Assembly (NCBI RefSeq): GCF_003704095.1
Contig: NW_020843935.1
Span: 62,001-126,000 of the forward strand
Reading direction: 5' to 3'
Length of the DNA stretch: 64,000 bases
DNA from: Pocillopora damicornis
Lineage: Eukaryota
The first letter of the stretch is position 1, and the number at the start of each line of letters is the position of its first letter. Shown in pieces: positions 18,251-63,880 of the stretch. The translations under genes and the position numbers were made by a program. The notes beneath the pieces were generated by a model. The model saw nothing but the letters and a program-made list of their open reading frames with translations. It was not told the origin of the DNA and ran no database searches.

Positions 18251-21200
18251 ATGAATTTGACTTACTCCATGTTAGCCCTATGGCCAATTGTTGTCCTCTG
18301 GTCATTTAGAGCGTCAGTTGGGCAAATTAAAAGAGGCACTGACAATTGGAGTTCTGCCCCTCAAGCCGGGTACGATCCAAGCACAAGGTTTCACCAGAGA
18401 TCACCAGTCTACAACCTTAAACATGAAGTGAATACCTCAAGCAGAGCGATACCACTCCAAAGCGGACTTGGAAGCAAATGGACTGTTCTTCAAAACTGGA
18501 GCCCTCCTAGAACAAAAACGTTATCTACGTCCAGTTCTAGAATGAAAATACCTGCATTGGCATCGCGATTTGAGAAAGGAGCTAACAGTAGACCTTATGT
18601 TCCAAAAGTATGGAGTTCACCGAGACCGAATCTTTATCAAAGAAGATTCTATAGCCCCAGACGTAGATCTAAGATCACAGCCACTGTTTTGGGACCAGCA
18701 AAGACAAATGGATACAGGCACAATATCTATCAATATTGGAACCATCCAAGCCTAGGCCCTCACCAAAGACCTGACCAAACTCCGAAGCGAGAAGTGCAGA
18801 AGACGCGATTTCCATTCCAACTCCAGTATGATGTTAGAGAGTATGGTGATGTTAGCCGAAATCCCAACCAGAAACTGACCTATGATGCAGCTGACTATCC
18901 ACCAATCTGGAACCGTCAAACAGCTACTCCTGTCGATAAGCAGTTTCGTGTTGCCAGAGATAGCATCAGAAAGACAAGTTCGCCATTTGTTGGCCAGAAT
19001 GGTTTCAGGAAAGGACAAAAACTTCGTAAAGACTGGATCCCTCTTAAACCCGGACTTTTTATTCCACTTTATGGTTCCGCAGCAATGACGAGAAACTTCC
19101 CCATGATAATGCACACTCGCGTAGGCCTGAATCCATATGAATCGAGTATCTCGCCCAAAGTTCCCAGCTGTTTGTTTAAAATGCAGCGCAATCGAATATC
19201 TCACATCAAAAAGATGAGCAGAATTCCAGCTCGTGCGTTAATTTTGTCCTCAGAAAACGGGAGGGCCACTCCAGGCCTCTACATACCAAGCTTAGCAAAT
19301 AACTACCATCAGCGAGAATTAGCATTGCAGCGAGAGTTAGAATCTGAGTCCAGTCAAGATCTGAAAAATGCATATGACAGCAGTGACACTGCATTTGCAA
19401 ACGTGTTAGGAGAGGTTAATCTTGGTGGAAGTAACTTGATTTCTGAGAGTGCACTGAACCAGCCGGCCTCGTCGAATTCAGGGTACAGGACATCCGGAGC
19501 AGAAGAAGAAGGAAGACCAGTACCAAGAACTTCGTATGGAACTACGAGCTACATAAGAAGGAAAAGCAGACTAAATGATCCGAAGCTGATCAGGTTAAGG
19601 CACATTCTTCGTTATATGAAGAAGCGGAGTCTTGATCTAACGAAAGCTCACAGAAATGATGACTTAAGTAGCTATACGCTAGGAGAAACACAAATATTGC
19701 ACGATTCAAATGATGCTCGTCTTTTTGATAAACGTAACGTCAATGACGAGATAGAGAAGAGATTTTCCATGCGTAAAGCGAAGGGAAGACGGAACTGGGG
19801 CGCTCACAATGAATTTGCGTCTAACGTTACGCGGGCATCTATGATTTTATTAAAGCAAAGAAAGCAGAACATGCACAAAAGGGCACTTCAGCTGCCAGAT
19901 GATCTTTTTCGAAACTCGACTGCAAAAATCGCGAAGGGGAGGTCACCTGGGACTGCAACAGTTGAAGGTGTACCAGCGGTTTTGAAAAAGGACAAGAAAA
20001 AGGAGAAGTCACCTTCGTTATCACCAGAAAACGTTTCGTCAAATATGCATCATGCGCTTCATCCTAGCAAACGAAAGAAAAATAAACAAAAACATGGTAG
20101 GAATTTCATAAATGTAAACGGCGGTGGAATATACTTCAATACAAGAAACGCGTACCTAAATCGCCACTTAGCGCCTTTTCATGACAATGGTGCGACAGAA
20201 AGATACGAGCCATTCTTCAATACTAGAGGGCCCTTTGAAGCCCACCAAATGGCGATGGCGAGACGTATGCGTGCAATGCGGTCACGTGGGTTGTTTCATT
20301 CCTTAGGCAATATTAACCCACGGTTTTTTTCTTACAGTCCATTTCGGTTTCCATTGATGCCTATGCCTCAGCAGTTTATGGCAATGCAACGATTTGGATT
20401 ACCAGTACGAAATTTTCCATCTGAGTACAGGACGCTACCTTTTCCGTCGACCCAGAATCATTTTGGCATTCCTTGGTACATGAGAGTGCAAAACAGGCTG
20501 ACAGAGACACAAGGAGGGGAGACTGAGGAGGTCGAAAAAGCAACTCCACATGACTCCCACGACCAAACTGTAATACCGCAAACCAGTGAAGGTTTCAAGA
20601 CTTCAATCTCCTCACAAGTAGGCAAAGGCAACTACGCTGAAAGCTTTCAAAGCCCTAAGACAGAACTATCCTCCCAGATCCTTAAAATAGAGAACAATAG
20701 GGCATTTGAAGGGCAGCCTATACTTAACGCAGAAGGCGTCGATACTAGTAATCCAGGCCTAGACGGAAAGGCGACGAATGTGCAGTTGACGGGAATCCAA
20801 GTGACAGATCAATCAGCCACCATGCTCAACAAGTGGTACCCTCTGCGCAAAGGCAAAGTTTCACTTATGTCTGATCCTCGAAAGTATACCTCTCAATGGC
20901 CATCTCGTCTCCCAGGATTAGATTTGGTTGCTACTTCTGACAGCCTTCGGTCAAGAGATGACTTTCCAGCCATATATACGCCTGGAATTTTCAATGCTTT
21001 TTACCCTAAAAATTATCAGAATTATCGTTCTCCTCCTTATAAAGATGATGTCTCAGAAGAGGGTAACATGGGAGTGGAAGAGTATATCCGGGGTACTGAG
21101 ACACCGCCGACTGTACCATCTGTGAATCAAGGCTTTAAGTTTCACGGCATATTGGGTCAGGAATATATTCCAAGTCCTGTTCCATATCATACATCCCCAT

Positions 21201-63400: not shown

Positions 63401-63880
63401 TTTGTAACCAGGAAGACAAATACATTTGTGACCACCTTCGTATCCTAAACACTGTCCGCCGTTCTTGCAGGGGTTTGGTATACACATATTAAGTTCTGAA
63501 GATAAAGAGGAAAAGTTATTGTAACTGTAAAGAATTGTTTGGTGAAATGATGCGAAACTCGCCAATTTTAAAATAAAAGGGTGCTTTGCCGAGACATTCA
63601 TAAATATCACGACCAGCTATCAGATTACTTTTTGCAGTGCACTGTTTGAAAAAGATTTGGCCTTGCTGACAAATGATCGCAAGGGAATAGATGCCCAAGT
63701 TGATTTTAAAACGAAATTGAAAATAAAGATCGATCAATTATTTTTTACCTTAGTTTTTCGCCAGCTTACCTTCGCACCGTAATCCCTGATACTGTGCTTG
63801 GCAGTGACACTTAAAACCGTTTTCTGTTTCTATGCAGTCTCCGCCATGTTGGCAAGGATTGGGGCGACAGTGGTCTATTT
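45409..63880 (-). CDS. Gene E (5'-truncated by the window edge): multi-EGF (at least 18 complete + 1 truncated), LamG3/concanavalin-A-like domain, ~780-aa P/Q/S/T/Y-rich basic tail; extracellular
   Basis: Phase-1 EGF exons: 63770-63880, 63385-63495, 61304-61414, 60739-60849, 60471-60581, 59833-59949, 59333-59443, 58930-59046, 58317-58433, 57746-57856, 57348-57539, 56486-56593, 56010-56120, 54227-54337, 53735-53845, 53177-53287 (CxPNPCxxxGxC...CxCxxG[YF]xGxxC). Linker exons: 52205-52309, 51727-51780. Further EGF exons: 51414-51506, 50701-50823. LamG3 exons: 49944-50096, 49213-49514, 48421-48502, 48138-48263 (HLSFD..DDSG..; ITISTWVKL; GQYHFEI..VRWFHR; WTQITATY; VFVNG; [10 protein letters not shown]; [10 protein letters not shown]). 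Tail exon 45409 (or 45314)-47751. All joins are in frame; N gaps may hide more exons. Confidence 0.9.
46803..47080 (-). repeat. 144-nt (48-aa) internal tandem duplication in the gene E tail
   Basis: [36 protein letters not shown] occurs twice. Confidence 0.9.
47815..48112 (+). mobile_element. Degenerate tRNA-SINE with (TAT/CAT)n microsatellite tail
   Basis: B-box-like GGGTTCAAGCCC at ~47844 and a TAT/CAT run at ~48038-48112. Confidence 0.5.
54395..54490 (-). pseudogene. Decayed duplicate of an EGF exon 5' end plus its acceptor
   Basis: 54446-54484 repeats 54334-54372 (GTC.ACTATGAGTGGGATT.AAACTTTG). The downstream reading VDDC... is broken by indels and stops. Confidence 0.55.
55491..56000. 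other. Assembly gap (others: 23752-24154, 24298-24397, 52080-52179, 56795-56894, 60044-60053)
   Basis: Runs of N. Confidence 1.
57054..57249. mobile_element. MITE copy in gene E intron
   Basis: CTAACCCTCTATATCC...TTAGGGGTTAAAGGGTTTA with the shared internal core. Confidence 0.6.

What the first reader, a model, noticed from the sequence alone, without database searches (positions are those of the whole stretch)
18251..63880. Clustered locus of five secreted structural-type proteins: candidate undescribed extracellular material or secretory-organelle system
Seen: five consecutive genes (D, A, B, C, E) with no housekeeping gene between them. D, A, B and C each have a signal peptide, a basic and often His-rich pro-region with dibasic sites, and only phase-1 introns. 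Together the cluster encodes polyPro, GYP repeats, short Cys modules, Asp-rich and His-rich tracts, and an EGF rod with a LamG3 domain. Known: cnidarian capsule proteins (minicollagens, NOWA, cnidoin) combine a KR-ended propeptide, polyPro or elastomeric repeats and small Cys-rich cross-linking domains, while coral skeletal matrix contains Asp-rich and EGF/LamG proteins. Inference: this is a co-expressed kit for one biopolymer (cnida wall or thread, adhesive/mucus, or desmocyte/skeletal matrix). None has a Gly-X-Y collagen tract, so these are not minicollagens.
Basis: partly seen in the sequence, partly recalled or inferred. Interest (0 to 1): 0.85.

Follow-up and report, generated by a model that had tools for sequence, protein, structure and literature searches.

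The report
Coral cluster of secreted structural proteins
A stony-coral genome carries a conserved run of genes for large, secreted, proline-rich proteins with no known relatives; two neighbouring genes carry stinging-capsule cross-linking domains, so the run most likely encodes stinging-organelle wall material, though no expression data confirm this.

Summary
The window comes from a pocilloporid coral, and D, A, B, C and E are real genes. Each has a hydrophobic signal-like start, a basic region after it, and only phase-1 introns.

Corrections:
- E is much larger than described. It starts about 9.5 kb beyond the window, has about 27 EGF exons and one LamG_3 domain, and ends in the unmentioned 812-aa P/Q-rich exon at 45314-47751.
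- Only B and C are detectably paralogous.
- No assembly gap cuts a recognisable exon. The gap at 56795-56894 may hide about two EGF exons.

Linkage is conserved. Stylophora has NDH2-D-A-B. The order B-C-E holds on both sides of the deepest split in the coral tail tree.

The cluster continues outside the window over about 115 kb. The extension includes two genes with 11 and 13 minicollagen-type cysteine-rich domains (CX3CX3CX3CX3CC), more Pro-rich genes and a second poly-EGF gene.

Best reading (about 0.45): a stinging-capsule (cnidocyst) structural gene cluster. The skeletal-matrix reading is weakened. E does not have the architecture of the known skeletal "EGF and laminin G" protein, and D's Stylophora orthologues are absent from the 60-protein skeletal proteome.

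Cell-type expression could not be tested. This same stretch was noted before by the scan (s1-763554, s1-763566).

The parts
18251..21461 (+). Gene D exon 1: signal-like start MNLTYSMLALWPIVVLWSF, then a basic, S/P/R/K-rich sequence with no known domain
   Evidence: ORF; 68% identical to Stylophora XP_022799952.1; donor CAG|GTGAGT at 21462, phase 1
21586..23270 (+). Gene D exon 2, ending in a stop before the first assembly gap
   Evidence: Acceptor tttttttttcag|; colinear with Stylophora PFX19684.1 and XP_022799953.1
25744..27974 (-). Gene A exon 2: short PTTP mucin-like run, Pro/Ala/Gln-rich body, Cys-bearing C-terminus
   Evidence: ORF; RNA contigs join 27974 to 28506 (records 16 and 23); 76-89% identical to the Stylophora neighbour of D
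28506..28833 (-). Gene A exon 1 (coding part): signal-like start and basic region with KRR and KR sites; the mRNA reaches about 29026
   Evidence: phase-1 junction
29889..30060 (+). Gene B exon 1: signal-like start MRFALFCVSIHLLFLG and a basic, His-rich region
   Evidence: GT..AG joint seen in 4 RNA runs
30672..32512 (+). Gene B exon 2: Pro-rich part, 14 GYP motifs (27-nt tandem repeat at 31504-31756), six-Cys module at 32378; 3' UTR to about 33170
34429..34597 (+). Gene C exon 1: signal-like start and basic region
   Evidence: matches residues 1-55 of Oculina XP_078383742.1
36359..38347 (+). Gene C exon 2: Pro-rich part, 7 GYP motifs (30-nt repeat at 37003-37204), six-Cys module CRCGCERRCPDLCNLC at 37303, Pro/Ser/Ala-rich tail
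   Evidence: paralogous to B
38987..40587 (+). Gene C exon 3: conserved PPPxPQVFIIxEN...SAEAL...FExAFxEALKSERRK motif, then Asp/Asn-rich and His/Lys-rich sequence
   Evidence: Phase-1 acceptor at 38987; colinear with the Oculina protein; motif conserved in L005, L007 and L012
45314..47751 (-).
   Evidence: the junction 48138|47751 reproduces the orthologues' sequence
48138..50097 (-). Gene E exons encoding the single LamG_3 (concanavalin-like) domain, at about 50097-49942, 49515-49177, 48505-48419 and 48264-48138; limits are from tblastn and approximate, except the 48138 donor
   Evidence: Pfam PF13385, E 4e-11; colinear with Desmophyllum, Orbicella and a JGI model
50701..63880 (-). Gene E: about 19 one-domain EGF exons, all phase 1-1, plus short linker exons; contains four of the assembly gaps. 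The gene continues beyond the window to its first exon at window-equivalent 73540-72872
   Evidence: Desmophyllum KAJ7365638.1 (2426 aa, 23 EGF stretches + LamG_3) is colinear

Best explanation
The five genes belong to a larger (about 115 kb), scleractinian-conserved cluster. It encodes secreted, mostly basic, proline-rich, largely disordered structural proteins.

Most likely they are components of the cnidocyst (nematocyst or spirocyst) wall or tubule matrix. In this model (inferred):
- The proteins are secreted into the post-Golgi capsule vesicle.
- The Pro-rich and GYP-repeat cores of A, B and C give stiffness and elasticity, as CPP-1 and cnidoin do in Hydra.
- The short Cys modules of B and C, and the CRD arrays of the neighbouring genes, lock the network by disulfide exchange.
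- The poly-EGF/LamG_3 rod of E, with its sticky basic tail, acts as a fibrous or adhesive scaffold.

Shown here: gene models, secretory-type N-termini, B/C paralogy, conserved linkage, presence in poly(A) RNA, and canonical CRD arrays next door.

Inferred only: cell type, co-assembly, cleavage of the basic N-terminal regions, and cross-linking.
For: - Two genes on the same contig carry canonical minicollagen-type CRDs. GH has 11, about 3.4 kb upstream of E's start. N4 has 12 plus one of the CPP-1 type, about 66 kb beyond the window's end. The pattern CX3CX3CX3CX3CC is the one defined for capsule proteins (PMC4863159). A PDB search gives only a weak match to NOWA CRD chains (E 0.09).
- B and C combine a signal, a basic N-region, a Pro-rich stretch, a tandem repeat core and a compact six-Cys module. 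The module keeps its Cys spacing in B orthologues and is nearly identical in the C orthologue. This is the design of cnidoin and CPP-1 (PMC4321713, PMC6910907).
- Poly-EGF proteins and several NOWAs belong to the cnidocyte-specific matrisome of Nematostella, where 32% of matrisome genes are expressed in the cnidocyte lineage (PMC12549020).
- Long low-complexity ORFs are concentrated at 80-193 kb of the contig: 12 of the 18 ORFs of 300 aa or more.
- Gene order is conserved in Stylophora and in both major clades of the E-tail tree.
- A and B transcripts are present in all 4 RNA libraries laid.
Against: - No cell-type or tissue expression data could be obtained.
- None of A-E carries a canonical CRD.
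- The E tail was found only in stony corals in an exhaustive profile search (7 representative proteins). Cnidocysts are shared by all cnidarians, and Scleractinia-age genes are enriched in calicoblasts (PMC8162421).
- The 10-kb flanks of the Desmophyllum E orthologue hold no CRD gene, so CRD adjacency is shown in one genome only.
- No k-mers are shared among the six promoters.
- A GPCR-like gene sits inside the extended cluster.
Confidence: 0.45

Rival explanations
1. Calicoblast or desmocyte products: an organic matrix or adhesive interface between tissue and aragonite skeleton. This would be a coral analogue of the vertebrate SCPP cluster of secreted, disordered P/Q-rich and acidic proteins.
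For: - The E tail family was detected only in Scleractinia.
- Calicoblast-specific genes are enriched for Hexacorallia- and Scleractinia-age genes, and adult calicoblasts are adhesion-dominated (PMC8162421).
- C carries an Asp/Asn-rich tract.
- The genes share a uniform intron phase and P/Q/M/H-rich composition.
Against: - No XP_0227999xx accession, the range of D's Stylophora orthologues, is in the Stylophora skeletal proteome table.
- The skeletal 'EGF and laminin G' protein is neurexin-like, with one EGF, one or two classical LamG domains and a transmembrane segment (PMC4890752). E has about 27 EGF exons and one LamG_3.
- The Asp tract of C is not conserved in L012.
- The neighbours carry capsule-type CRD arrays.
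Confidence: 0.2
2. Another extracellular material, such as surface mucus or cuticle, gland-cell adhesive, or mesoglea components.
For: - A has a short PTTP mucin-like run.
- The proteins are basic and contain Tyr and Pro, with GYP motifs reminiscent of adhesive or elastomeric proteins (own knowledge).
- Transcripts are present in adult-colony poly(A) RNA from several studies.
- In Nematostella, gland cells also express specific matrisome sets (PMC12549020).
Against: - There are no mucin, VWD or trefoil-type domains.
- CRD arrays next door point to capsules.
- Nothing ties the genes to gland cells.
Confidence: 0.2
3. No common function. The region would be a patch of fast-evolving genes for disordered secreted proteins, kept together only by the generally high synteny of coral genomes and by local duplication (B/C; the two CRD genes; the two poly-EGF genes).
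For: - Only B and C show sequence similarity among the five genes.
- No promoter k-mers are shared.
- A GPCR-like gene interrupts the extended cluster.
- Co-expression is untested beyond the co-presence of A and B.
Against: - Eleven or so genes of the same unusual type lie within 115 kb, against four unrelated long ORFs in the remaining roughly 140 kb of the contig.
- Order and orientation are kept across the deepest split in the coral tail tree.
- All share the same design: signal, basic region, one giant exon, phase-1 introns.
Confidence: 0.15

Closest known systems
Cnidoin and CPP-1 (Hydra nematocyst wall proteins; PMC4321713, PMC6910907)
   Same: Signal peptide, a long N-terminal region before the core, a repetitive elastic or proline-rich core, and a small six-Cys module presumed to cross-link. 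No collagen triple helix.
   Different: - B and C have one internal module with spacing CxCxCx3Cx3Cx2C, not terminal CX3CX3CX3CX3CC domains.
- The repeat is GYP-based, not GxGQQ.
- They are two to three times larger, and C adds an acidic/His-rich exon.
- No sequence homology is detectable.
NOWA (nematocyst outer wall antigen) and minicollagens
   Same: The neighbouring genes GH and N4 carry arrays of canonical CRDs with Pro-rich linkers, like the eight C-terminal CRDs of NOWA. A-C have short polyPro runs like minicollagen flanks.
   Different: - No Gly-X-Y tract occurs anywhere on the contig.
- No SCP or C-type lectin domain was detected in GH.
- A-E themselves lack CRDs.
Poly-EGF / fibropellin-like proteins of the Nematostella cnidocyte matrisome (PMC12549020); NCBI names E orthologues 'neurogenic locus Notch protein-like' or 'eyes shut homolog'
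   Same: A long array of non-calcium-binding-type EGF domains, one per phase-1 exon, in a secreted protein.
   Different: E has a single LamG_3 domain and a conserved, coral-restricted basic P/Q/Y-rich tail of about 810 aa. It lacks a transmembrane segment, LNR, ankyrin and multiple LamG domains.
[quoted passage not shown]
   Same: The domain vocabulary: EGF plus a laminin-G-like fold.
   Different: The skeletal protein is neurexin-related, with one EGF, one or two classical LamG domains and a transmembrane segment. E has about 27 EGF exons, LamG_3 (PF13385) and no transmembrane segment. It is not the same gene family.
Vertebrate SCPP gene cluster (enamel, dentin and milk proteins; own knowledge)
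   Same: A cluster of genes for secreted, disordered P/Q-rich and acidic proteins with a uniform intron phase.
   Different: SCPP introns are phase 0 and the family arose by tandem duplication from SPARCL1. Here the phase is 1, only B/C are demonstrably paralogous, and no link to mineral is shown.

Membership tests
Minicollagens | Central Gly-X-Y collagen tract (about 12-16 triplets) | tested here: not met
   No (G-X-Y) run of 5 or more in any of the proteins, and none of 8 or more in six frames of the whole contig
Minicollagens | Terminal cysteine-rich domains with the pattern CX3CX3CX3CX3CC (PMC4863159) | tested here: not met
   A regex scan of the window in six frames finds none in A-E. The pattern occurs 10 times in GH (plus one looser variant) and 12 times in N4, both outside the window
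Minicollagens | Polyproline stretches flanking the core | tested here: inconclusive
   Runs of only PPPP to PPPPPP in A, B and C; overall Pro content is 14-16%
CRD-linked capsule wall proteins (cnidoin, CPP-1, NOWA) | At least one canonical or near-canonical minicollagen CRD | tested here: not met
   B and C carry CxCxCx3Cx3Cx2C instead. Its Cys spacing is kept in B orthologues and it is nearly identical in the C orthologue. The neighbours GH and N4 meet this feature; N4's first domain has the CPP-1 N-CRD spacing CX3CX5CX3CX3CC (PMC6910907)
CRD-linked capsule wall proteins (cnidoin, CPP-1, NOWA) | Repetitive elastic or rigid Pro-rich core | tested here: met
   Tandem 27-nt and 30-nt repeats encode GYP motifs, 14 in B and 7 in C
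CRD-linked capsule wall proteins (cnidoin, CPP-1, NOWA) | Signal peptide followed by a propeptide ending in Lys-Arg | tested here: inconclusive
   Hydrophobic N-termini and basic regions with KR, KRR and RR sites are present. No cleavage predictor was available and no conserved propeptide motif was tested
CRD-linked capsule wall proteins (cnidoin, CPP-1, NOWA) | Expression in developing cnidocytes and disulfide-dependent incorporation into capsules | not testable with these tools
   Only bulk RNA contigs were available. Atlas supplements do not hold the orthologue identifiers
Coral skeletal organic matrix proteins (SOMPs) | Peptides detected in cleaned skeleton proteomes | tested here: not met
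   No XP_0227999xx accession (D's orthologues are XP_022799952/3) occurs in the Stylophora 60-protein table. The orthologues of A, B, C and E could not be checked by accession
[quoted passage not shown] | Neurexin-like architecture: one EGF, one or two classical LamG domains, a transmembrane segment (PMC4890752) | tested here: not met
   E and its orthologues have 8 to 23 EGF stretches plus one PF13385 LamG_3 and a long tail
Coral acid-rich proteins (CARP / SAARP type) | Extended, conserved Asp/Glu-rich domains | tested here: not met
   C exon 3 has one short Asp/Asn tract. It is replaced by mixed Glu/Lys/His sequence in the L012 orthologue, and whole C has pI 5.96

The most novel reading that the evidence does not exclude
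The whole locus of about 115 kb is a co-regulated, stony-coral-specific 'material kit'. Its products would be CRD-array proteins, two poly-EGF rods, and Pro-rich or GYP elastomers that use a previously undescribed six-Cys cross-linking module. They would co-assemble into the wall or thread of one cnidocyst type, for example spirocysts, whose composition is essentially unknown. This would be the first genomic cluster known to encode a cnidarian organelle material. The less likely variant is a convergent, SCPP-like calcification-interface cluster.
Probability: 0.3. Interest if true: 0.8.

Novelty: new variant of a known kind. Interest (0 to 1): 0.6.

Why it matters
All orthologues found are annotated 'uncharacterized' or misnamed Notch-like or eyes-shut-like. 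No paper in the library mentions any of the searched gene identifiers.

If the cluster encodes capsule material, it would add several new protein families and a new cysteine module to the few known building blocks: minicollagens, NOWA, cnidoin and CPP-1. It would also show that such genes can sit in a conserved genomic cluster, and it would supply cell-type markers for corals.

If instead the genes are calicoblast products, the cluster would be a candidate coral-specific toolkit for attaching tissue to skeleton.

Either way the corrected gene models make the question directly testable against existing coral cell atlases.

Tried and rejected
- Pfam on all large exons and on the Oculina C orthologue found nothing except EGF and LamG_3.
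- Papers mentioning LOC111337848, XP_022799952, LOC110041564, LOC114960540, LOC107342483 or LOC141860348: none.
- The held supplements of the Stylophora cell atlas (3 files) do not contain the identifiers.
- The ESM Atlas was busy twice and then gave no usable hit for the CRD gene.
- Contig look-ups for Stylophora XP_022799952.1 and for three Acropora E orthologues were not on record, so CRD-E adjacency could not be checked in Acropora.
- The 10-kb flanks of the Desmophyllum E gene show no G, H or C homologue.
- Shared 8- to 10-mers among six promoters: none, no more than in controls.
- A was tested as a paralogue of B and C. BLAST finds no significant similarity (E above 1), so I do not endorse a three-member family.
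- The idea that the 806-aa ORF is a sixth gene was rejected. It is E's last exon.
- Joined (spliced) models were built only inside local scripts, for composition and comparison with session data.
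Full report
ORGANISM AND CONTEXT

The largest exon of gene D is 99% identical to a TARA Pacific metagenome contig. It is 64-68% identical to Stylophora pistillata proteins. The genome has 234.35 Mb in 4,393 contigs, and the window is contig C570:62001-126000. From memory, those figures fit the Pocillopora damicornis assembly. 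I treat the source as a Pocillopora species.

GAPS FIRST

The two gaps at 23752-24154 and 24298-24397 lie between the stop codons of the convergent genes D and A. The other four lie inside gene E.
- 60044-60053 and 52080-52179 are intronic. The Desmophyllum orthologue is colinear across the first, and a GT donor lies about 17 nt before the second.
- 55491-56000 begins about 8 nt after an EGF exon that ends in a GC-type donor.
- 56795-56894 coincides with 87 residues of the Desmophyllum orthologue that have no match here. About two EGF exons may be hidden or missing there.

No recognisable exon is cut by a gap.

GENE MODELS

D has two exons, 18251-21461 and 21586-23270, giving 1631 aa. The intron is phase 1 with consensus splice sites. 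The original Stylophora annotation joins both parts into one 1511-aa protein, whereas NCBI splits them.

A (minus strand) and B (plus strand) are divergently transcribed. RNA contigs join A's 28506 to 27974. They join B's 30060 to 30672 in four runs from four studies, and B has a poly(A) end near 33170. The resulting proteins are 852 and 670 aa. Both introns are phase 1.

C has three exons, 34429-34597, 36359-38347 and 38987-40587, giving 1252 aa. Both introns are phase 1. The NCBI model of Oculina patagonica (XP_078383742.1) is colinear with all three exons. The acidic and His-rich exon therefore really belongs to C.

- The 806-aa ORF at 45314-47734 is its last exon, 45314-47751.
- A spliced JGI model and the NCBI proteins of Orbicella and Desmophyllum run from the LamG_3 exons straight into this exon.
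- The junction 48138|47751 reproduces their sequence.
- Upstream, E continues past the window through eight more EGF exons. Its first exon lies at window-equivalent 73540-72872. That exon encodes a signal-like start, a basic stretch and a Leu/Gln-rich region, and is 76% identical to Desmophyllum.
- E is therefore a secreted protein of well over 2,000 aa: N-terminal region, about 27 EGF domains, one LamG_3 domain (PF13385), and a basic P/Q/Y-rich tail of about 810 aa.
- The tail has strongly conserved islands and a poly-Lys end.

These hold.
- Hydrophobic N-termini are followed by basic regions, His-rich in B and C, with dibasic sites.
- All introns found are phase 1.
- GYP repeats, short polyPro runs, a six-Cys module in B and C, and Asp- and His-rich tracts in C are all present. 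There is no Gly-X-Y tract.
- Signal peptides were judged by hydrophobicity only.
- Between D and E there is no gene with a recognisable domain.
- The left neighbour is an NDH2-type oxidoreductase.

RELATEDNESS

B and C are paralogues. They share colinear matches in the N-terminal region, the repeat region and the Cys module (E down to 2e-10). A, D and E show no detectable similarity to B/C or to each other. The cluster is therefore not simply a tandem array.

CONSERVATION

- Stylophora has NDH2-D-A(-)-B(+) in the same order and orientation.
- One unnamed coral assembly has B, C exon 2, C exon 3, then the E tail, LamG_3 and EGF on the opposite strand.
- A second unnamed assembly shows ORFs of matching sizes and strands: 595(-), 481(+), 609(+), 501(+), 712(-), then LamG_3(-).
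- In the most divergent lineage found (E tail 29% identical), C exon 3 again converges on the E tail.
- A tree of tail sequences splits into an Acropora-side clade, which contains the first of those unnamed assemblies, and a Pocillopora/Desmophyllum/Orbicella clade. The B-C-E arrangement thus spans what is, from own knowledge, the deepest split in Scleractinia.
- A profile of the tail searched against 1.84 billion proteins found only seven representative proteins. Every one that carries a name is a stony coral.

BEYOND THE WINDOW

Scanning the rest of contig C570 changed the picture.

About 3.4 kb upstream of E's start lies an exon with 11 cysteine-rich domains: ten match CX3CX3CX3CX3CC exactly and one is a looser variant. 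The linkers are Pro-rich. The exon is preceded by two phase-1 EGF-like exons. Further upstream is a large exon encoding a signal-like start, a basic stretch and a Q/E/G-rich domain, with phase-1 donors. These are plausibly one gene, which I call GH.

Further on lie:
- a second poly-EGF gene, whose likely first exon again encodes a signal-like start, a basic stretch and a Pro-rich region;
- a GPCR-like gene;
- two more Pro-rich genes, one with VPxPV-type repeats;
- a second CRD-array gene, N4, with 12 canonical domains plus one with the spacing of the CPP-1 N-terminal CRD.

Twelve of the contig's 18 ORFs of 300 aa or more lie between 80 and 193 kb, and eleven of them are of this type. The rest of the contig has four unrelated long ORFs.

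INTERPRETATION

The pattern CX3CX3CX3CX3CC is the defining cross-linking domain of minicollagens and NOWA, and it also flanks cnidoin and CPP-1 (PMC4863159, PMC4321713, PMC6910907). A PDB search with the GH exon gives only a weak match to NOWA CRD chains (E 0.09).

In Nematostella, 32% of matrisome genes are expressed in the cnidocyte lineage. That set includes four NOWAs and several poly-EGF proteins (PMC12549020).

B and C follow the design of cnidoin and CPP-1, namely a signal, a long N-region, a repeat or Pro-rich core and a compact six-Cys module. Their module has a different spacing, however, and its Cys spacing is kept in B orthologues and it is nearly identical in the C orthologue.

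I therefore favour a cnidocyst structural role, at about 0.45.

The skeletal reading is weaker.
- The known skeletal 'EGF and laminin G' protein is neurexin-like (PMC4890752).
- No XP_0227999xx accession, the range of D's orthologues, appears in the Stylophora skeletal proteome.
- C's Asp tract is not conserved.

In its favour, the E tail is restricted to corals, and Scleractinia-age genes are enriched in calicoblasts (PMC8162421).

Other extracellular materials remain open, as does the possibility of no shared function.

WHAT IS MISSING

There is no cell-type expression, no proteomic localisation and no test of co-regulation. Co-presence of A and B transcripts in four libraries is weak evidence, and contig depth cannot rank genes. 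CRD adjacency is shown in this genome only.

Noticed in passing
L009:3157-5207 (-) = C570:138957-141007, window-equivalent 76957-79007: An exon encoding 11 minicollagen-type cysteine-rich domains with Pro-rich linkers: ten exact CX3CX3CX3CX3CC matches and one looser variant. All 60 Cys counted in the 640-aa ORF lie in its CRDs. It is single-copy in a protein search of the own genome.
   Followed up: partly
L009:7524-9470 (-), with EGF-like exons at L009:6260-6150 and 5786-5688: A large exon with a signal-like start (MKVLGYFGTVFLVYASQLLATLLCQADA), a basic stretch and a Q/E/G-rich acidic domain. Phase-1 donors at 7753 and 7570 could join it through two EGF-like exons to the CRD exon, making one gene. 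This was not verified with RNA.
   Followed up: partly
C570:191143-192675 (+), in L016: A second CRD-array exon with 80 Cys and a poly-basic C-terminus. It has 12 canonical CRDs plus one with the CPP-1 N-CRD spacing CX3CX5CX3CX3CC.
   Followed up: partly
C570:150374-160589 (-), in L010 and L013: A second poly-EGF gene with at least 9 phase-1 EGF exons. Its probable first exon (159366-160589) encodes a signal-like start, a basic stretch and VPVPV-type Pro-rich sequence, echoing the layout of E.
   Followed up: no
C570:169116-171338 (-) and 178204-179382 (+): Two more large exons for basic, Pro-rich proteins. The first has about 20% Pro with repeated (V/I)P(F/Y/V)PV units and His runs. The second has a clear signal-like start and a KRLRKRSLR basic block.
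   Followed up: no
C570:162486-163772 (-): A seven-transmembrane, GPCR-like ORF lies inside the extended cluster. It is the one clearly unrelated gene there.
   Followed up: no
window 56003-56118 (-): An EGF exon of E appears to use a GC donor (G|GCAAGT) a few bases before the gap at 55491-56000. All other EGF exons use GT.
   Followed up: partly
window 70960-70856 and 68475-68326 (window-equivalent; L003 7160-7056 and 4675-4526): Two EGF exons near the 5' end of E have no positional counterpart in the Desmophyllum protein model. They may be lineage-specific exons, or exons skipped in that annotation.
   Followed up: no
window 5198-6925 (-): A 575-aa, very acidic Ser/Glu/Asp-rich ORF without a signal peptide and without a Pfam match. 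It lies upstream of the NDH2 gene and is not part of the cluster.
   Followed up: partly
window 12312-13391 (+): An NDH2-type pyridine nucleotide-disulphide oxidoreductase exon (Pyr_redox_2, E 2e-33). It is conserved as the left neighbour of D in Stylophora (L008 3498-6576).
   Followed up: partly
window 42895-43284 (-): A 129-aa ORF between C and E with a hydrophobic start and a basic tail. It has no Pfam match and no homologue was sought.
   Followed up: no
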